Below, one piece after another: positions 25,769-57,529 of a DNA stretch of 64,000 nucleotides; the first letter of the stretch is position 1; each line of letters begins with the position of its first letter. A model generated the notes under the pieces. It saw only the letters and a program-made list of their open reading frames with translations, was not told the origin of the DNA and made no database searches. The stretch is taken from sequence record PQ471516.1, one strand, 5' to 3'. The translations under genes and the position numbers were made by a program.

Positions 25769-25884
25769 ATGTACCAGAAATGGTTAACATAATCATGTTA
25801 CTTTCCTCCCTTATACAATAATGATTTGTTATTCCGCATTTTATTTTTTCATTTCTCTTTTTTCGTACAAATTCTTTTTCGTAC

Positions 25885-25953
25885 TGCCCCTACTTAGGGG
25901 CATTTTTATTGCCTAAAATAAAGTTTTGACATTTGATGATTAGGTGATATAAT
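25885..25953 (+). promoter_or_regulatory. terminator plus sigma70 promoter
   Basis: TGCCCCTA/TAGGGGCA plus T; TTGACA (25926)-16 nt-TATAAT with extended -10 TG. Confidence 0.75.
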
Positions 25954-38479: not shown

Positions 38480-38643
<164 letters not shown>

Positions 38644-38658
38644 ATAAAGGTTTATTTT

Positions 38659-39048
38659 ATGCATAGTACTGATGTGATATTACACGGAGTGAGATGTACA
38701 AATTTACTTTTGGTATCATATATACCAGCACGTGTAAATCGTCAAGACATGGTATATCCAACTTCTAATACAGCAGTGCTAAAAGATGATACACAACTCG
38801 CCTACCGTTATACATTCGCTTATTCACCATATAGTGCTTTGCATGTTATCTTCAAAGAAGATGGTACAGTACAAGTGAAATATGTTGATAATGATAAGTT
38901 TAACGATGCTATCATCTCCAACTTCACTATACATGATACTGAAGAAGAGTTATTCATGAAAAGTACTATACAAAATGATTTCGGTATAGGCTCTAAAGAA
39001 ATTGAAACATTTCGCTTGATCTGGGATGAGTATTTTGGTACAATTTAG
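38659..39048 (+). CDS. EExFFQxS-motif family protein
   Basis: DTEEELFMKSTIQND; start moved to ATG 38659 (the track start lies in tRNA genes). Confidence 0.75.
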   Translation: MHSTDVILHGVRCTNLLLVSYIPARVNRQDMVYPTSNTAVLKDDTQLAYRYTFAYSPYSALHVIFKEDGTVQVKYVDNDKFNDAIISNFTIHDTEEELFMKSTIQNDFGIGSKEIETFRLIWDEYFGTI

Positions 39049-39080
39049 TACTGATAAATATTAATGAAAGGTATAGAGAA

Positions 39081-39278
39081 ATGACTAAATCCGAACTTCT
39101 GGCTTTATTAGAAAATTATCCAGATGATGCATGTATTGAAGTTGTGCATACTGCACAACATTTTGACATTGAAGATGTTGTACGATACAATGACAAAGGT
39201 GTGATGATTATGGAACTATGCATCGGTGCTTTGAAAACTGTACCAGAATCAACTAAACGAAACTCCCTAAAGGAATAA
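39081..39278 (+). CDS. hypothetical protein
   Basis: MTKSELLALLENYPDD... Confidence 0.75.
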   Translation: MTKSELLALLENYPDDACIEVVHTAQHFDIEDVVRYNDKGVMIMELCIGALKTVPESTKRNSLKE

Positions 39279-39284
39279 AATATT

Positions 39285-39518
39285 ATGGAAACTAATACAA
39301 TTTTAGATGTAGTAAACAGTGTTAATACTGGTGACTTTGTTCACATTCTTTTATCCAACATCCGTGTTAAGGGTATTGTTGAAAGTGTTGATTCTGAAGT
39401 TCTAACTATTGTTGAAGTTGATCCATACGACAATAATAAATCAGTTCGTCTGTGCATTGATGTTTCCAAAATTGTAGCACTCGGTACAGAAATTATTACT
39501 GAAGAAACTAATCTATAA
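39285..39518 (+). CDS. small beta-barrel (Sm/SH3-like pattern) protein
   Basis: VHILL..IRVKGIVESVDSEVLTI...LCIDVSKIVAL. Confidence 0.5.
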   Translation: METNTILDVVNSVNTGDFVHILLSNIRVKGIVESVDSEVLTIVEVDPYDNNKSVRLCIDVSKIVALGTEIITEETNL

Positions 39519-39527
39519 AACGACAAT

Positions 39528-39606
<79 letters not shown>

Positions 39607-39660
39607 CTTAAGAGGATTTAATATGTTTAAAGATGAACGTCCAGATTTGTAAAATAATCA

Positions 39661-39689
39661 TTGACTAAATAATCCAGTACTGATAAAAT
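39661..39689 (+). promoter_or_regulatory. sigma70 promoter with AGTACT in the spacer
   Basis: TTGACT-17 nt-TAAAAT. Confidence 0.75.
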
Positions 39690-39695
39690 AAATTT

Positions 39696-39785
<90 letters not shown>

Positions 39786-39789
39786 ATAT

Positions 39790-39871
<82 letters not shown>

Positions 39872-39892
39872 ATTTTAATTTAAGGTGTATCC

Positions 39893-40057
39893 ATGACGCA
39901 TGAAGAATGGATGAATGATATTAATTTTAGATATTCGGGTATCGGTAGTTGGCGAAAATATCATTGGGAAATTATATCAGACCCAGCAGAATACGATAAA
40001 CTTATAAACCATGAAGTATATCCGTGGTTCTTTATTGAAATAATGGTACGAATATGA
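39893..40057 (+). CDS. MTHEEW-family microprotein 8 (54 aa)
   Basis: MTHEEWMNDINFRYSGIGSW... Confidence 0.8.
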   Translation: MTHEEWMNDINFRYSGIGSWRKYHWEIISDPAEYDKLINHEVYPWFFIEIMVRI

Positions 40058-40218
40058 CGCATGAAGAATGGATGAATGATATTAATTTTAGATATTCGGG
40101 TTTCGGTAAATGGCTAAAGTATCATTGGGAATTTATTACTGATCCTCAAATGTACGATAAACTTATAAATGATCAAGCATATGAAATTTACTTATTTGAA
40201 ATACTGGTCAGAACATGA
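40054..40218 (+). CDS. MTHEEW-family microprotein 9 (54 aa)
   Basis: MTHEEWMNDINFRYSGFGKW...; ATGA coupled. Confidence 0.8.
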   Translation: MTHEEWMNDINFRYSGFGKWLKYHWEFITDPQMYDKLINDQAYEIYLFEILVRT

Positions 40219-40379
40219 CGCATGAAGAATGGATGAGAAAACAAAAGCTAACATGGAATCCTTATTGTTACCAGTTAGACCCAAGAATGTGGGATGTGAT
40301 ACGTATTAAATGTATGTACAAATCATTTCTTGGTGATATAATGGATGTTGAAGTACTGATGAATTTAGTACATCGATAA
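40215..40379 (+). CDS. MTHEEW-family microprotein 10 (54 aa)
   Basis: MTHEEWMRKQKLTW...; ATGA coupled. Confidence 0.8.
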   Translation: MTHEEWMRKQKLTWNPYCYQLDPRMWDVIRIKCMYKSFLGDIMDVEVLMNLVHR

Positions 40380-40409
40380 TAAAAATCTTATTTAAATGGG
40401 ATTGATATC

Positions 40410-41043
<634 letters not shown>

Positions 41044-41049
41044 CAAATC

Positions 41050-41354
41050 GGGCCATTAGCTCACGGTGGTTAGAGCAAACGACTCATCGACAATGGTGAC
41101 TTTCATCAGTAATGGTGATTGAAAAACTGGATGAATTCAGGGAAATCTTAACACGTAATGGTGATGACAATCCTGAGCCAAGCCCAATAAGCGTATTGGG
41201 AAGGTGCAGAGACTAGATGGTACAGTACGTTCTTACTGTGTAATACATCATTAGCGTCCGGCATCCCTATGGGATGATGATATAGTCCGTACTATTGTGA
41301 AAACTATAGATTATACGAATCGTTAGGTACTGTGTTCGACTCACAGATGGCTCA
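41050..41354 (+). tRNA. trnI: intron-containing tRNA-Ile2(CAU): exons 41050-41087 and 41318-41354
   Basis: Spliced cloverleaf GGGCCAT/ATGGCTC, GCTC/GAGC, AACGA-CTCATAA-TCGTT, CTGTG-TTCGACT-CACAG; C4-G69 and C5-G68 as in Ile2. Confidence 0.9.
41088..41317 (+). mobile_element. group I self-splicing intron (230 nt, no ORF)
   Basis: P AATTCAGGGAAA, Q AATCCTGAGC, R GTGCAGAGACTAGA, S ATGATATAGTCC; P1 U-G at the 5' splice site; terminal G41317. Confidence 0.92.
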
Positions 41355-41373
41355 CAAACTTTGAAATAAAATA

Positions 41374-42078
41374 ATGAAAATAAAATTAGAATATCCATAC
41401 AGTAATGATTGGAAGAATGGGTATATACAGATAAACCCTGAAGGTAGAAGAACTGTAATACTTTATAATTCTCCAACTGATAGAAGCAGTACTCAATATG
41501 CTAGATATCTATTAGCAGTAAAAGAAGGTAGATATTTAACTGAGTCTGAAGAAGCAGACCACATTGATAATGATTTCACAAATGATGATTTGTCTAATTT
41601 ACAAATACTTCATGTTGATGAACATCGTTATAAAACACATAAGAATGGAGTACAAGCACGATATGATTCATTTGTATGTGCTTGTTGTAATACGGAATTT
41701 TCCCGTAGACATACTAAAGTGAAATCATATACAAAATATTGTAGTGTTGAGTGTTCACAAAAAATGGTCAAGCCTCCGTCAAATACAAAGGGTGGTGAAA
41801 CATCAGTTGATTATGAAAAGGTAAAAGAATATATTAACCAAGGTTTGTTAGATACTGAAATTGCTAAAATAATGAATATTAGCAAAGGTTCCGTACTAAA
41901 TTATAGAACCAAAAATAATATACCATCAAAACATTTTGAGAAAGTAAGGATATTAGAAGATAATATTACTGAGATCAGAAAACGTTTGACAGATGGTGAG
42001 AAGAAGGTTAAGATATATGAAAGTTATGGTGTTTCGAAGAATGTATTTGCTAGGTTTTTAAAACGCCATAATATGTAA
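41374..42078 (+). CDS. free-standing HNH homing endonuclease
   Basis: ADHIDNDFTNDDLSNLQIL..H; CxxC...YCSxxC zinc module; two C-terminal HTH-like repeats. Confidence 0.85.
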   Translation: MKIKLEYPYSNDWKNGYIQINPEGRRTVILYNSPTDRSSTQYARYLLAVKEGRYLTESEEADHIDNDFTNDDLSNLQILHVDEHRYKTHKNGVQARYDSFVCACCNTEFSRRHTKVKSYTKYCSVECSQKMVKPPSNTKGGETSVDYEKVKEYINQGLLDTEIAKIMNISKGSVLNYRTKNNIPSKHFEKVRILEDNITEIRKRLTDGEKKVKIYESYGVSKNVFARFLKRHNM

Positions 42079-42085
42079 TAAATAA

Positions 42086-42159
42086 GACTCTGTAGCACAA
42101 TTCGGTGGTGCGAACGACTGTTAATCGTTAGGTTGGGGATTCGAGTTCCTCCAGAGTCG
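42086..42159 (+). tRNA. trnN: tRNA-Asn(GUU)
   Basis: GACTCTG/CAGAGTC, AACGA-CTGTTAA-TCGTT, G73. Confidence 0.92.
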
Positions 42160-42165
42160 CAAATC

Positions 42166-42294
42166 ATTGGACACATTAATCTTCGATGGTAATGCTGGTT
42201 AATATCTTACGGCTGTAAAATGCAATACATTACATATTGCTTCAGGTACAGAGATATAAAGATTAATTAATAAGGTATCCTTATTTTGTCCAAT
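42166..42294 (+). ncRNA. putative pseudoknotted structured RNA
   Basis: Six perfect helices plus a 6-bp pseudoknot (see findings). Confidence 0.65.
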
Positions 42295-42323
42295 CCTTAA
42301 TAACTAGAAATGGTGGAACAAAA

Positions 42324-42770
42324 ATGAAAGGTGTTTCAATTTTTTACGATTACCATGAACAAGGTTTACCACATCAGATTGCTGGAATCTATTCTACGTC
42401 TGATAAAACAGAAGAAGAGATGCGTACTGAATTATTGTCTCTAATCGGTTCTCAAAGTTTCCATGAACGTGATCAACCAATTTTCATTAACCACACACAT
42501 TTGTATGCAAAAAGTTTGCTAGGTGAAGAACTTGATAAAAAGGTGGAATACACGTTAAAACAGTTCTTCCCATTTGCACTTGATTTAGTTGGCTTCCAGT
42601 CATCCGAATTCAAGTTCATGTACTATGATGGTGATGCATATGAGTTTATTTGGAACAATCGTTATCATAAACAATTGCACCAACATCGTTTAGATCTTCA
42701 ACACGAAGCGGCTGAAGCATATAAAGCAAAACGAGAAGCACAGAGGCGTGAAGGTAAAGTACAGAAATGA
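42324..42770 (+). CDS. hypothetical protein
   Basis: ORF with GGTGG SD. Confidence 0.75.
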   Translation: MKGVSIFYDYHEQGLPHQIAGIYSTSDKTEEEMRTELLSLIGSQSFHERDQPIFINHTHLYAKSLLGEELDKKVEYTLKQFFPFALDLVGFQSSEFKFMYYDGDAYEFIWNNRYHKQLHQHRLDLQHEAAEAYKAKREAQRREGKVQK

Positions 42771-43069
42771 TAGAATCTATCTTATGTGTACTGTTGCCAA
42801 TTTTAGTAGTTGCTTTGATATGTCTTTATTATGGTTACAGTACTGTAATTGATAAAAAGCAAGTTTACGTCATTACATTCAGTACTACGCATATTGAGTT
42901 TGGTAATGTACACCCTGGTATCAGTTATATTGCATATCGTTGTAAGTACTTCCATAAGTTCAAATCTTATGATATGATCTATTACTGTGATGAATCCAAC
43001 GTGAATCGTTATATTGACATAAACGATGAATCGAAAAAATCGTTTTATAGTTTTAAAGAATTAAAATAA
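42767..43069 (+). CDS. membrane-anchored hypothetical protein
   Basis: N-terminal TM. Confidence 0.7.
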   Translation: MIESILCVLLPILVVALICLYYGYSTVIDKKQVYVITFSTTHIEFGNVHPGISYIAYRCKYFHKFKSYDMIYYCDESNVNRYIDINDESKKSFYSFKELK

Positions 43070-43081
43070 ATGGAGACGGAT

Positions 43082-43330
<249 letters not shown>

Positions 43331-43409
43331 TTTTTAATTGACACAACTTTGAATGAGGTGTATTATGTTCCAAGAAGAAAACTGGGGTTTTTAACATAAA
43401 GGGGAATGT

Positions 43410-43517
<108 letters not shown>

Positions 43518-43600
43518 AAATGATAAATAATACAGTAAGATGACCTCCCCTCAATACGAAAGAGTATGGAGACTTGTTGGTTATCTTACTTCTTAAATTA

Positions 43601-43673
43601 GCCTTCTTAACTCAGTTGGTAGAGTAATCGCCTTGTAAGCGATAAGTCATCCGTTCAAGTCGGATAGAGGGCA
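43601..43673 (+). tRNA. trnT: tRNA-Thr(UGU) copy 1
   Basis: GCCTTCT/AGAGGGC, ATCGC-CTTGTAA-GCGAT. Confidence 0.92.
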
Positions 43674-43675
43674 CA

Positions 43676-43757
<82 letters not shown>

Positions 43758-43769
43758 TAAAGGTGAACA

Positions 43770-44210
43770 ATGAAAATGAACATTGTAAAATTTGTTGATT
43801 ATGTATTACAAAACAAAACATGGTCACTACACGATGTACAAGTAGAAGACGTTGGTGAAGTGCGTGTTTTTTGCTATGATCCAGAATTAGAAGAAACCAC
43901 TGATTTGAGTAAATGTTTTAATATTTTTATGGCTTATGAACTCAATAAGAAGTTTTATTCAATTGATATGTATTTGGAACGTTTTACATTTAGAATTTCT
44001 GAATATGATAATTTTAATGATAATTTTAATGATAATTATTACGATATCAGCATTGAATTTAATGTAGATGATATAAACACTGAAGAAAAATTCTTTCAGT
44101 ACTCACTAGTTAATGACACATTGGGCTTGACATTTGATGACGTTAAAGCTATACTTAAAGTTCAGAAATTGATTCCTGAAGATGTGCAAAATCCCTTACG
44201 TGAAGAATAA
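43770..44210 (+). CDS. EExFFQxS-motif family protein
   Basis: NTEEKFFQYSLVNDT. Confidence 0.8.
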   Translation: MKMNIVKFVDYVLQNKTWSLHDVQVEDVGEVRVFCYDPELEETTDLSKCFNIFMAYELNKKFYSIDMYLERFTFRISEYDNFNDNFNDNYYDISIEFNVDDINTEEKFFQYSLVNDTLGLTFDDVKAILKVQKLIPEDVQNPLREE

Positions 44211-44223
44211 TCTGGAGATATAA

Positions 44224-44418
44224 ATGTTTTTGAATTTACTAACTGTGTTTGGACGTACCTTACTATTAGCAGTAATTCATACACCTGGTATCACGAAGTT
44301 AGTTTCTTATAAGTTCAAAGAAGATTTACATAATGGTACTGAAAAGTATCTTCGTAAATTGAATAAAGATTTAGGTGTTAAAGAAACAACACCATTCAAG
44401 AAGTATAGTGACGATTAA
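44224..44418 (+). CDS. hypothetical protein
   Basis: GGAG SD. Confidence 0.7.
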   Translation: MFLNLLTVFGRTLLLAVIHTPGITKLVSYKFKEDLHNGTEKYLRKLNKDLGVKETTPFKKYSDD

Positions 44419-44457
44419 AATATATTACCGAATAATTCAGTACTGGATATGCTGTAC

Positions 44458-44589
44458 TGATAGCTTCTAGCCAGTACTGGATTCCTCCTTTTTCACTAGA
44501 AGCTGTCACTTATTCATACGTTTGTTACCCTCATAGCACTCGTTGTTTCAAAAGGTATCTTATTACCCCCCTCTCGTAAGATACTTGAA
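44458..44589 (+). ncRNA. putative sRNA with three C-rich hairpin loops
   Basis: Promoter-like TTACCG-17 nt-TATGCT (44425-44453), three hairpins, no ORF. Confidence 0.6.
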
Positions 44590-44597
44590 TTTAGTAG

Positions 44598-44627
44598 TTG
44601 ACTTTTCAACTTCTTATATGTTATACT
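44598..44627 (+). promoter_or_regulatory. sigma70 promoter
   Basis: TTGACT-18 nt-TATACT with extended -10. Confidence 0.65.
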
Positions 44628-44676
44628 TAGGCTGAATCAAATGATTCGGCCTTTTTCTTTTTTAGGAGTGCTTTTA

Positions 44677-45099
44677 ATGAATTTCAGTACTACAAAAGAA
44701 GCGATAGCACATGCAACAGTTTCTATGTGTAAAGCCATTGAGGATGGAAATTTTAACAAGGATATATACTACCAATTAAACGAACAGCAAGTTGATATTA
44801 ATTGTTATAATGAAAACGGTATGTGTACTTCATACGATAAAGCCAGTAATATCTTCTTTATGATCCGAGAGCTACCAAATGAACAATTATGTAAGTTCTA
44901 TGCCGAAATTGATATGTATAAGAACTATATTAATTTCCAATTCTTGGATATAGATCTATTTCGATTTGACATTACTTCTGATATGTTAAACCTAACAGAA
45001 GAAATGTTTTTCCAAATGAGCTTAGTTTTCGATTTTAAGTACTTCGAATATGAAACATTACGTAAGATATTTCACGTAGCGGGGACTCTACATGAATAA
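44677..45099 (+). CDS. EExFFQxS-motif family protein
   Basis: LTEEMFFQMSLVFDF; ATG 44677 with AGGAG SD. Confidence 0.8.
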   Translation: MNFSTTKEAIAHATVSMCKAIEDGNFNKDIYYQLNEQQVDINCYNENGMCTSYDKASNIFFMIRELPNEQLCKFYAEIDMYKNYINFQFLDIDLFRFDITSDMLNLTEEMFFQMSLVFDFKYFEYETLRKIFHVAGTLHE

Positions 45100-45511
45100 T
45101 AAGATTCTCAAGAAAATTTTAGATAGGACTGATATCTTCATTAAAGGTAGTGATGAAAATTACAACGTTCTGCATGATGGTGATATCGATACTCACATCT
45201 CATCTTATCTAAACAACTACCGTTGTAGTGTAAGTCATTGCAATAATATAGTTTTCGTAACATCATCTGAAACATTAGGATCTGTTGGTTGGATTGACAT
45301 TTTGGAGGATGGATTCACTTATGAAAATGAAGTTCGAGATTACACACTTGAATTTTACGACATTCAGGACTATAATTTAACAGAAGATGTGTACTTCCAG
45401 ATGAGTACTGTCTATGATTTTGATATCATCGAATTTGAAGATTTGAAGAGAATCTTTAAGATTTGTGATTTTTTAAAAGGGAACCGAAATGAATCGACAA
45501 TCTTTGCCTAA
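45092..45511 (+). CDS. EExFFQxS-motif family protein
   Basis: LTEDVYFQMSTVYDF. Confidence 0.8.
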   Translation: MNNKILKKILDRTDIFIKGSDENYNVLHDGDIDTHISSYLNNYRCSVSHCNNIVFVTSSETLGSVGWIDILEDGFTYENEVRDYTLEFYDIQDYNLTEDVYFQMSTVYDFDIIEFEDLKRIFKICDFLKGNRNESTIFA

Positions 45512-56871: not shown

Positions 56872-56931
56872 AAAGGGTTGACTACGGTCAACCCTTTTTT
56901 TATGGGACAAATTCGTAAATGGTGATACAAT
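56872..56931 (+). promoter_or_regulatory. terminator plus promoter of the putative ncRNA
   Basis: AAAGGGTTGAC/GTCAACCCTTT plus T; GGGACA-16 nt-TACAAT with extended -10. Confidence 0.65.
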
Positions 56932-56937
56932 GATCTA

Positions 56938-57400
56938 TGCACAACCACAATGACAGTACTTGTACTGATAATCTTCCCTAATTCACTTGAAAACGTAAAG
57001 GATAGATGAGCTTTTCATTGTAGCGAACAGCAAAAGAAACCCGTTAGATGTGGGCATAGTTTGAACCCCTCACGGCAATGCGGCTGTATAAAGAACCACG
57101 TTAGGATGGCTGGTGGTTCCTCGATAGACATATAAGGATAACACCTTACGAATTATCTAAGGGAGAGTTATCAGATTTTGTACAATATAGTTGCGTCCAA
57201 AATTTGAGTACTCACATTAAGTATTTGATTGCATAGATACTTAATGAAGATACACTATGTTTAAAAGTGTAGACCGTCATATGAAACTGAAGTAGAGAGA
57301 ACCAGGATGACCCGCTTTCGTGCTCTTTAAGAGTAATCTTCAATGCAATAGCTCTGATACCATCAGCGTCAAATTCCCCTCGGTGTGGGGGGGGGAAGAA
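56938..57400 (+). ncRNA. putative large structured ncRNA (~460 nt)
   Basis: No ORF; at least 10 helices (see findings). Confidence 0.6.
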
Positions 57401-57437
57401 AAATCACCTCAACAAATCCCGTCAATATTAAAAGTCC

Positions 57438-57466
57438 TTGACAGTTATTATACATTCGCGTAAGAT
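57438..57466 (+). promoter_or_regulatory. sigma70 promoter
   Basis: TTGACA-17 nt-TAAGAT. Confidence 0.7.
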
Positions 57467-57529
57467 ACGTAGTATCAGAAGCGAACAGACATCTCGAAGA
57501 GATGGATGATTAACATTAAGGAACATCTA

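What the first reader, a model, noticed from the sequence alone, without database searches (positions are those of the whole stretch)
44458..44589. sRNA candidate displaying three anti-Shine-Dalgarno loops
Seen: after a promoter-like TTACCG-17-TATGCT come three hairpins: a 13-bp stem with loop ...GGATTCCTCCTTTTTCA (compare the 16S 3' end GGATCACCTCCTTA), GTTA-CCCTCA-TAGC, and a 10-bp stem with loop TTACCCCCCTCTCG. G-U pairs favour the + strand. The loops complement AGGAGGA, TGAGGG and GAGAGGGG; GAGGG-type SDs are used by genes in this window (57822, 62278, 63647). Established: C-rich loops of S. aureus RNAIII pair with SD sequences. Inference: a multi-target translational repressor or 16S-tail mimic for host shutoff or temporal control.
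Basis: partly seen in the sequence, partly recalled or inferred. Interest (0 to 1): 0.72.

Follow-up and report, generated by a model that had tools for sequence, protein, structure and literature searches.

The report
Conserved phage RNA with anti-Shine-Dalgarno loops
Between two early genes of a giant E. coli phage lies a conserved, non-coding stretch that folds on the sense strand into hairpins whose exposed loops carry the ribosome's own mRNA-docking motif; this makes it a credible new phage regulatory RNA, but whether it is expressed and what it binds have not been shown.

Summary
The window is Escherichia jumbo phage Turkey5 (Asteriusvirus group). The three hairpins are real. The + strand fold of 44455-44590 is -35.6 kcal/mol with z -5.0, against z -2.0 for the minus strand. 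Their loops carry CCUCC, CCCUC and CCCCCCUCUC and are predicted to be unpaired.

The 258-nt intergenic block is single-copy, has no Rfam match and has no conserved ORF. It is shared by about 36 Asteriusvirus genomes, although the neighbouring genes differ.

Relatives have four hairpins, each with a CCUC loop. Stems change while the loops persist: hairpin 4 in Turkey5 versus phage A4 has 5 of 11 pairs changed on both sides. All one-sided stem changes give G-U pairs on the + strand.

The proposed promoter is weak (7 of 12) and is not conserved. The RNA is more likely the 3' end of the upstream early transcript, stopped by a conserved intrinsic terminator (44629-44664) that overlaps a strong promoter for the next gene.

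No specific target was found, and no transcriptome exists for this genus. Two relatives lack the hairpins.

Verdict: a real, probably functional structured RNA. SD-pairing repression is the best reading but is untested. A protein decoy, a cis-acting 3'-UTR role and a DNA-level role remain open.

The parts
44127..44155 (+). Strong sigma-70-type promoter (TTGACA-17-TATACT, 11 of 12) inside the upstream gene. It is the likely source of the transcript that carries gene 44224-44418 and the hairpin region as its 3' end.
   Evidence: The link to the element is inferred.
44224..44418 (+). Upstream 64-aa gene of unknown function (phrog_28948). Its stop codon precedes the element.
44425..44453 (+). It is weak (7 of 12) and not conserved in relatives. 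Its spacer holds palindrome copy 1, in the same position as in two tRNA-Ser promoters of the window.
   Evidence: (not listed).
44437..44448 (.). Palindrome copy 1 (core CAGTACTG 44438-44445). It marks the 5' edge of the block conserved in relatives. It is complementary to copy 2, so a pseudoknot is possible. It is also a member of a motif that is over-represented genome-wide.
44458..44508 (+). Hairpin H1: 13-bp stem (one U-G pair) and a 25-nt loop. The loop holds palindrome copy 2 (44472-44479) and UUCCUCCUU (CCUCC at 44484-44488).
   Evidence: The stem is conserved in 10 phage variants. A4 has one compensatory pair.
44523..44538 (+). Hairpin H2: 5-bp stem closing the hexaloop CCCUCA (44528-44533). 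The same loop is closed by different stems in relatives.
   Evidence: (column pair 108/117: C-G versus U-A).
44554..44585 (+). Hairpin H4: 10-11-bp stem and 12-nt loop UACCCCCCUCUC.
   Evidence: Against phage A4: same stem and loop lengths, 5 pairs changed on both sides.
44593..44614 (+). Hairpin or inverted repeat H5, enclosing the -35 hexamer of the downstream promoter.
44598..44627 (+). Sigma-70-type promoter TTGACT-18-TATACT with TG before the -10 hexamer. It is conserved in all relatives. The predicted start lies inside the 5' arm of the terminator, so its own transcripts should escape termination.
   Evidence: The start-site position is inferred.
44629..44664 (+). Intrinsic terminator: 10-bp stem 44629-44652 followed by a T-run. 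It is the likely 3' end of the structured RNA.
   Evidence: It is annotated as a terminator in G17 and UE-S1.
44665..45099 (+). SD AGGAG (44665-44669) and the downstream 140-aa gene (ATG at 44677). The gene is found only in Turkey5 and JNE01.

Best explanation
The block at about 44437-44664 is a conserved, non-coding, + strand structured RNA. It is most likely the 3' end of the upstream early transcript. It may be released by processing, and in Turkey5 a weak promoter of its own may add to it. It ends at the intrinsic terminator 44629-44664.

The RNA has three hairpins in this phage and four in most relatives. Each holds a pyrimidine loop with CCUC or CCUCC, the anti-SD core, single-stranded.

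The most likely mode of action is base pairing of these loops with purine-rich, SD-type sequences (GGAGG, GAGGG(U)A) at the ribosome-binding sites of phage or host mRNAs. This would block initiation, in a multi-seed, loop-to-SD logic like that of C-rich-loop sRNAs.

Shown: the structure, strand, conservation, exposed motifs and terminator.
Inferred: transcription, release as a discrete RNA, pairing with SDs and repression.
For: - Fold: z -5.0 on the + strand against -2.0 on the minus strand. With the terminator included, z -6.5 against -3.5.
- No Rfam family matches. There is no ATG-started ORF of 30 aa or more in the region. Small-ORF annotation is inconsistent among relatives.
- The block is about 70-74% identical in about 36 Asteriusvirus records. 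Yet the downstream gene is unique to Turkey5/JNE01, and the gene immediately upstream differs between this phage and its relatives.
- Turkey5 and JNE01 show no differences across 44187-44740, against 2-3.5% in the flanks.
- RNAalifold recovers H1, H2, H4, H5 and the terminator. 95.6% of cells are paired.
- Every one-sided stem change gives a G-U pair on the + strand.
- Compensatory changes: H2 U-A versus C-G; H1 A-U to G-C in A4; H4 with 5 of 11 pairs changed on both sides between Turkey5 and A4, with equal stem and loop lengths.
- CCUC motifs are predicted unpaired with P = 0.9-1.0 in H2-H4 and 0.4-0.7 in H1. The mean over the RNA is 0.46.
- Motif turnover with the number kept up: UE-S1 lost CCUC from two loops but carries a new CCCUC just 5' of H1.
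- GAGGG and GGAG SDs are used in the window, and all three GAGGGTA sites are SDs.
- The H1 loop shares CCUCCUU with the host 16S 3' end, read from NC_000913.3.
- The terminator and surrounding genes are all on the + strand.
Against: - There are no expression data for any Asteriusvirus.
- No conserved promoter sits directly upstream.
- Duplex scans of the 64-kb window found no target better than shuffled loops gave. Pairing would therefore rest on generic 5-8-nt matches, and complementarity of a CCUC loop to an SD is true by definition.
- Formal covariation in the 9-sequence alignment is weak: 2 pairs with double changes, and a covariation term of +0.82.
- Diversity is low. IMG/VR, metagenome and GTDB scans added nothing new.
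- ph0011 has lost H1-H4 and EJP2 lacks the element at this locus. It is therefore dispensable for at least some isolates.
- The two CAGTACTG copies belong to a genome-wide DNA motif.
Confidence: 0.4

Rival explanations
1. Protein decoy or sponge. The RNA is made as above, but its repeated CCUC loops act as multivalent binding sites for an RNA-binding protein of the host or phage. Candidates are a factor that normally recognises the pyrimidine-rich 16S 3' tail, or ribosomal protein S1. The architecture would resemble CsrB/RsmZ-type sponges, with a different motif.
For: There are 3-4 exposed copies of one short motif on separate hairpins, and the number is maintained despite turnover. No specific RNA target was found. 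The H1 loop shares CCUCCUU with the 16S tail.
Against: No candidate protein was identified. The flanking genes have no known domains. The similarity to 16S beyond the heptamer is not conserved. This is pure inference.
Confidence: 0.15
2. A purely cis-acting 3'-UTR element. The hairpins protect the upstream mRNA from 3' exonucleases. Alternatively, the C-rich, G-poor stretch helps Rho stop read-through ahead of the intrinsic terminator. Either way it insulates the upstream unit from the promoter at 44598-44627, and no trans target exists.
For: The element sits between a stop codon and a conserved terminator that overlaps a promoter. The stretch 44506-44585 is among the eight most C-over-G 80-nt windows of the + strand. 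In ph0011 the promoter and terminator survive without H1-H4.
Against: Stabilising hairpins do not need conserved loop motifs, yet the loops are conserved while the stems change. Rho loading sites are typically unstructured, whereas this region folds strongly. A strong intrinsic terminator already follows it.
Confidence: 0.2
3. A DNA-level element. The inverted repeats and the two CAGTACTG palindromes are binding sites for a phage DNA-binding protein (an operator or architectural site) that controls the adjacent promoters. RNA structure would be incidental.
For: CAGTACTG is about 50-fold over-represented genome-wide. It lies in the spacer of two tRNA promoters and of the weak promoter here. Both copies and the H1 stem sequence are nearly invariant. 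H5 is an inverted repeat around a -35 hexamer.
Against: The H2 and H4 stems change sequence but keep pairing. The wobble changes are tolerated only as + strand RNA. The loop motifs are strand-specific and exposed. A DNA site would conserve sequence, not pairing.
Confidence: 0.12
4. A minus-strand RNA with purine-rich GGA loops that sponges CsrA.
For: On the minus strand the H1 loop reads AAGGAGGAA, which contains two GGA. In relatives the H4 loop also contains GGA.
Against: The minus-strand loops of H2 and H4 in the window contain no GGA. The scan found no minus-strand promoter or terminator between 44400 and 44700. The minus-strand fold has z of only -2.0. Every wobble pair would become an A-C mismatch. 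All neighbouring genes are on the + strand.
Confidence: 0.03

Closest known systems
Staphylococcus aureus RNAIII and other sRNAs with C-rich loops, such as RsaE/RoxS (own knowledge of the literature; not homologues)
   Same: Several hairpins present C-rich single-stranded loops complementary to SD sequences. They are multi-seed and end in an intrinsic terminator.
   Different: There is no sequence or covariance-model similarity. This one is encoded by a virulent jumbo coliphage. It probably lies in a 3' UTR rather than being a separate gene. No target pairing has been shown.
CsrB/RsmZ-type multi-hairpin protein sponges
   Same: The architecture is similar: a short motif repeated in the loops of successive hairpins, with the copy number maintained.
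   Different: The motif is CCUC on the transcribed strand, not GGA. There is no Rfam hit, and no partner protein is known.
3'-UTR-derived enterobacterial sRNAs of the CpxQ/SroC/DapZ type (own knowledge)
   Same: The element sits between the stop codon and the intrinsic terminator of an mRNA. It has a conserved seed-like region and a terminator with a U-tail.
   Different: Processing and chaperone binding are untested. It carries several seeds in loops instead of one linear seed.
Small stable RNAs next to the phage T4 tRNA cluster, and sRNAs reported from other virulent phages, e.g. phiKZ (PMC8244752)
   Same: It is a non-coding RNA of a large virulent phage, located just downstream of the phage tRNA cluster (tRNAs at 38480-43754).
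   Different: There is no detectable homology. The T4 RNAs have no assigned function. The anti-SD loop motif has not been described for them, to my knowledge.
Promoter/stem-loop cassettes that flank variable early genes in T4-type phages (own knowledge)
   Same: A conserved terminator-plus-early-promoter module (44598-44664) sits between genes that differ among relatives.
   Different: It is single-copy in the window and in each record. The H1-H4 hairpins with CCUC loops are not part of that concept.

Membership tests
Any curated Rfam family (including RNAIII and CsrB/RsmZ) | Covariance-model match at or near the gathering score | tested here: not met
   One search found no hit in the region. 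One search found only weak matches (10-24 bits, against thresholds of 39-111), mostly on the terminator.
Base-pairing sRNA with SD-binding C-rich loops (functional class) | Single-stranded C-rich loops complementary to SD sequences | tested here: met
   (P unpaired 0.9-1.0 for H2 and H4). SD types GGAG and GAGGG are used in the window.
Base-pairing sRNA with SD-binding C-rich loops (functional class) | Discrete transcript with its own promoter or a defined processing site | tested here: inconclusive
   The promoter-like site matches 7 of 12 positions, is not listed and is not conserved. Processing cannot be tested here.
Base-pairing sRNA with SD-binding C-rich loops (functional class) | Intrinsic terminator at the 3' end | tested here: met
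   (44629-44652 plus T-run). It is conserved in all relatives.
Base-pairing sRNA with SD-binding C-rich loops (functional class) | Identifiable targets with pairing beyond chance | tested here: not met
   the best duplexes in the window are no better than those of shuffled loops. Host mRNAs were not scanned.
CsrA/RsmA sponge | Multiple GGA motifs in hairpin loops of the transcribed strand | tested here: not met
   The + strand loops have none. On the minus strand only H1 has GGA in the window. The minus strand lacks promoter and terminator signals.
3'-UTR-derived sRNA | Located between a stop codon and the intrinsic terminator of the same transcription unit | tested here: met
   stop at 44418, terminator at 44629-44664, upstream promoter at 44127-44155.
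3'-UTR-derived sRNA | Accumulates as a processed stable RNA and binds a chaperone | not testable with these tools
   No transcriptome was found for this genus.
Rho utilisation site | C-rich, G-poor RNA | tested here: met
   44506-44585 has C 22 and G 9, among the top eight 80-nt windows.
Rho utilisation site | Largely unstructured RNA | tested here: not met
   strongly folded, z -5.0.
Repeated extragenic cassettes (REP-like, or promoter/stem-loop cassettes) | Many copies per genome | tested here: not met
   The self-comparison of the window found only the short palindrome elsewhere. There is one place per record.
Small protein-coding gene | ORF conserved in frame among relatives | tested here: not met
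   No ATG-started ORF of 30 aa or more lies in 44419-44640. Single-base indels separate the lineages. Annotated mini-ORFs differ in position and strand between 121Q, G17 and SD-1_S14, and are absent in the others.

The most novel reading that the evidence does not exclude
The RNA is a multivalent mimic of the ribosome's anti-SD tail. It is made early by a virulent jumbo phage. It either competes with 16S rRNA for SD sequences on a broad set of mRNAs, preferring GAGGGUA-type sites that pair better with the loops than with 16S, or it sequesters a factor that normally binds the 16S 3' end. Either way it would reprogram translation initiation during infection.
Probability: 0.1. Interest if true: 0.85.

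Novelty: new member of a known kind. Interest (0 to 1): 0.55.

Why it matters
Regulatory RNAs of virulent phages are barely charted, and none has been described for the Asteriusvirus jumbo coliphages. This is a conserved RNA that displays several copies of the anti-SD core. If it is expressed, it would be a clean system for asking how a phage tunes or hijacks translation initiation with RNA instead of protein. It would also add a new family to RNA databases. Even if it acts only in cis, the compact unit of hairpins, promoter and overlapping terminator shows how early transcription units are insulated in these 350-kb genomes.

Tried and rejected
- Rfam, at gathering and permissive thresholds: no family.
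- tRNA/tmRNA scan: nothing in the region.
- A search for more diverse homologues found only 121Q itself and one G17-like contig. The searches were two DNA patterns in IMG/VR, one each in metagenomes and GTDB genomes, and a protein-anchored IMG/VR scan. A rigorous covariation test was therefore not possible.
- tblastn with both flanking proteins: the upstream protein is confined to Asteriusvirus and the downstream one to Turkey5/JNE01.
- Duplex scan of the loops against the whole + strand of the window: no target beyond what shuffled loops gave. The top H1 hits were just other copies of the palindrome.
- Self-comparison for further copies of the element in the window: none.
- Literature on Asteriusvirus, phAPEC6, fEgEco12 and Sharanji: no transcriptome, promoter map or ncRNA is described. 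Searches for the palindrome and for phage anti-SD sRNAs returned nothing relevant.
- Pfam and PHROG searches on the neighbouring proteins: function unknown.
- Rejected readings: small ORF, minus-strand CsrA sponge, repeated cassette, cis RNA thermometer (the anti-SD motifs are unpaired, not sequestering an SD).

These included the E. coli 16S 3' tail, and consensus boxes of model coliphages and of E. coli. None was used as tool input. The 16S letters used in this report were read from NC_000913.3.

Full report
**Identity of the window.** The region 43800-45200 is 100% identical to Escherichia phage Turkey5 (PQ471516.1, 351 kb) and 97.4% identical to vB_EcoM_JNE01. More distant matches are all Asteriusvirus jumbo coliphages (121Q, PBECO4, G17 and others). 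The finding lies just downstream of the phage tRNA cluster (seven tRNAs at 38480-43754). It sits in the gap between a 64-aa gene (44224-44418) and a 140-aa gene whose real start is the ATG at 44677, preceded by AGGAG. The intergenic region is therefore 44419-44676, 258 nt. All neighbouring genes are on the + strand.

**Checking the observation.**
- The hairpins are as described. H1 has arms 44458-44470 and 44496-44508 (13 bp, one U-G) and a 25-nt loop containing UUCCUCCUU. H2 is 44523-44538, 5 bp around CCCUCA. The third hairpin (my H4) is 44554-44585, 10-11 bp around UACCCCCCUCUC.
- The + strand of 44455-44590 folds to -35.6 kcal/mol (z -5.0; 0 of 200 shuffles as good). The minus strand gives -31.8 (z -2.0; 8 of 200).
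- CCTC occurs 48 times in 64 kb. Three copies in 132 nt, all in loops, is about 30 times the expectation.
- Partition-function folding puts the CCUC motifs at P(unpaired) 0.99-1.0 in H2 and H4 and about 0.4-0.6 in H1. The mean over the RNA is 0.46.
- The SD claims hold. About 10 of the 20 GAGGG sites in the window sit 4-7 nt before an ATG, including 57811, 62269 and 63635.
- The weak point is the promoter. TTACCG-17-TATGCT (44425-44453) matches the consensus at 7 of 12 positions and is below the scan's threshold.

**What else is in the gap.** Downstream of H4 there is a fifth hairpin or inverted repeat (44593-44614). It encloses the -35 hexamer of a strong promoter, TTGACT-18-TATACT (44598-44627, with TG before the -10). 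An intrinsic terminator follows immediately (stem 44629-44652, T-run to 44664). The predicted start of that promoter falls inside the 5' arm of the terminator. Its own transcripts should therefore lack a complete terminator hairpin, while read-through from upstream is stopped (inference). A strong promoter at 44127-44155 (11 of 12) lies upstream. The simplest reading is that H1-H5 form the 3' end of the upstream early transcript.

**Comparative evidence.**
- A sensitive blastn search finds the block at 70-74% identity in about 36 Asteriusvirus records, one place per genome. I fetched and aligned 121Q, G17, CMSTMSU, Turkey3, WPEC3, SD-1_S14, EC.P1, A4, UE-S1, ph0011, EJP2 and JNE01.
- Conservation begins at a palindrome (core CAGTACTG, 44438-44445) and runs to the terminator.
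- The neighbours are less constant. The downstream protein exists only in Turkey5/JNE01. The gene immediately upstream is a 64-aa gene here but a 94-aa gene in most relatives.
- Turkey5 and JNE01 have no differences across 44187-44740, while flanking coding DNA differs by 2-3.5%.
- Most relatives have four hairpins, with loops UUCCUCCUU (H1), ACCCUCA (H2), CCCUC (H3) and UUCCUCUU (H4). Turkey5 has lost H3.

**Structure versus sequence conservation.**
- RNAalifold on nine sequences recovers H1, H2, H4, H5 and the terminator. 95.6% of pair cells are standard pairs, against 34-47% when the partners are slid.
- Formal covariation in that set is weak, with two pairs showing double changes, because the sequences are few and close.
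- The more divergent variants are informative. H2's CCCUCA loop is closed by AUU/AAU in 121Q, AUCA/UGGU in the CMSTMSU group and GUUA/UAGC in Turkey5.
- In A4, H1 has an A-U to G-C exchange.
- H4 of Turkey5 and A4 both have 11 bp and a 12-nt loop (UACCCCCCUCUC versus ACCCUCCCUCUA). Five of the 11 pairs differ on both sides and two more by wobble-compatible single changes.
- Every one-sided stem change seen gives G-U on the + strand, which would be A-C on the minus strand. These are in Turkey5 H1 and H4, UE-S1 H1, 121Q/G17 H4, CMSTMSU H2 and A4 H1.
- This argues for selection on + strand RNA structure and for keeping the loop motif.
- UE-S1 lost CCUC from the H2 and H4 loops but has a new CCCUC immediately 5' of H1. 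The number of motifs seems to matter more than their exact place.
- Counter-examples exist. ph0011 has lost most of H1-H4 while keeping the promoter and terminator, and EJP2 has other DNA at this locus.

**What it is not.**
- It is not in any Rfam family.
- It is not a tRNA or tmRNA.
- It is not a repeated cassette.
- It does not encode a conserved small protein. There is no ATG-started ORF of 30 aa or more, the lineages differ by single-base indels, and annotators placed mini-ORFs at different positions and strands in different genomes.
- The minus-strand CsrA-sponge idea fails on several counts. Only the H1 loop carries GGA in this phage. The scan found no minus-strand promoter or terminator between 44400 and 44700. 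The minus-strand fold is weak.

**Mechanism.** The loops are complementary to the SD types used by this phage. The H1 loop shares the heptamer CCUCCUU with the 3' end of host 16S rRNA, which I read from NC_000913.3 rather than from memory. The flanking GGAU that makes the Turkey5 loop look more 16S-like is not conserved. It is the edge of the palindrome.

All three GAGGGTA sites of the window are SDs (14712, 62269, 63635). They could pair over 7-8 nt with the UUACCCUC-type loops. However, the counts do not depart from expectation. A duplex scan of the whole + strand found nothing better than shuffled loops gave.

My best explanation is a multi-seed RNA that pairs with SD-type sequences. It rests on architecture and conservation, not on any identified target, and I give it 0.4.

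The rivals are:
- a protein decoy using the repeated loops (0.15);
- a cis-only 3'-UTR role, either stabilisation or help for Rho; the stretch 44506-44585 is among the most C-over-G windows, but it is highly structured (0.2);
- a DNA-level operator role tied to the palindromes (0.12).

That the region is a functional + strand RNA structure of some kind I would put near 0.8.

**The palindrome.** CAGTACTG occurs 33 times in the window, against about 0.7 expected. AGTACT occurs 160 times against 21. The sites are evenly spread, fall in all three reading frames and in intergenic DNA, and are equally enriched in relatives. Two copies lie in the element, one at its 5' edge and one in the H1 loop.

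The two copies are mutually complementary over 10 nt. They could form an H-type pseudoknot, which would leave UUCCUCCUU in a connecting loop. The A-to-G change in the CMSTMSU group and the flank changes in Turkey5 keep that pairing (my reading of the sequences). But the same changes also keep DNA symmetry, and the motif is clearly a genome-wide DNA-level signal. I cannot tell which constraint applies here.

**Comparison with known systems.**
- In logic it resembles C-rich-loop sRNAs such as RNAIII or RsaE.
- In layout it resembles 3'-UTR-derived enterobacterial sRNAs.
- In multivalency it resembles CsrB-type sponges.
- It is a member of none of them by sequence or covariance model.

I found no paper describing it or any Asteriusvirus transcriptome. 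I rate it a new member of a known kind (phage-encoded structured or regulatory RNA) and of moderate interest. Interest would rise sharply if expression and loop-SD or loop-protein contacts were shown.

Noticed in passing
whole window; e.g. 43084-43097, 43205-43218, 39675-39682, 40786-40793, 44438-44445, 44472-44479: The palindrome AGTACT/CAGTACTG is strongly over-represented: AGTACT 160 against 21 expected, CAGTACTG 33 against 0.7. It is evenly spread, falls in all three reading frames and in intergenic DNA, and is equally enriched in relatives. It forms perfect 14-bp palindromes at 43084 and 43205. It lies in the spacer of two tRNA-Ser promoters. This is a frame-independent, genus-wide DNA signal of unknown function, and I found no literature on it.
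   Followed up: partly
window 40996-42078: There is a group I intron (Rfam RF00028, 95 bits, 40996-41309), followed by an ORF annotated as an HNH homing endonuclease (41374-42078). It sits between tRNA-Ser(GCU) and tRNA-Asn. I did not determine which host gene, if any, the intron interrupts.
   Followed up: no
window 39790-39868: A weak tRNA-model hit (33 bits, gathering score 29) lies directly after tRNA-Ser(UGA). ARAGORN did not call it. It may be a degenerate or unusual tRNA.
   Followed up: no
window 43070-43600, especially 43534-43590: This is a second structured intergenic stretch upstream of the two tRNA-Thr genes. A 12-bp hairpin (z -4.0) carries CCUCCCCUC in its interior. There are also two perfect 14-bp palindromes. 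The region is nearly identical between Turkey5 and JNE01 (2 differences in 600 nt). It may hold further non-coding RNAs.
   Followed up: partly
window 56926-57505: This 580-nt gap has no ORF of 55 aa or more. It contains a G8 run next to CCCCUC (57376-57395) and has no Rfam match. The best, though not significant, duplex partner of the H4 loop lies here.
   Followed up: no
window 25795-25915: Another intergenic pyrimidine-rich stretch (UUUCCUCCCUU at about 25800) lies ahead of a terminator-like hairpin and a strong promoter. The layout is similar to the finding (C-rich RNA, terminator, promoter), but there is no sequence similarity.
   Followed up: no
window 44598-44664 and homologous sites in L002-L011: An early promoter is fused to an intrinsic terminator so that the predicted transcription start lies inside the terminator's 5' arm. 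The module is conserved in all relatives examined that retain this locus, even where the adjacent genes differ (it is absent, with the rest of the element, from EJP2). It looks like a compact insulator between transcription units.
   Followed up: partly
window 43770-45511: The genes flanking the element (43770-44210, 44677-45099, 45092-45511) are distant paralogues of one family of unknown function (phrog_17453/phrog_35192), within a run of ORFs of about 140 aa.
   Followed up: partly
L011 1400-1580 (phage ph0011); L015 100-900 (phage EJP2): Two sequenced isolates lack the hairpin cluster. ph0011 keeps the 5' palindrome, promoter and terminator but has lost most of H1-H4. EJP2 has unrelated DNA at this locus.
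   Followed up: yes
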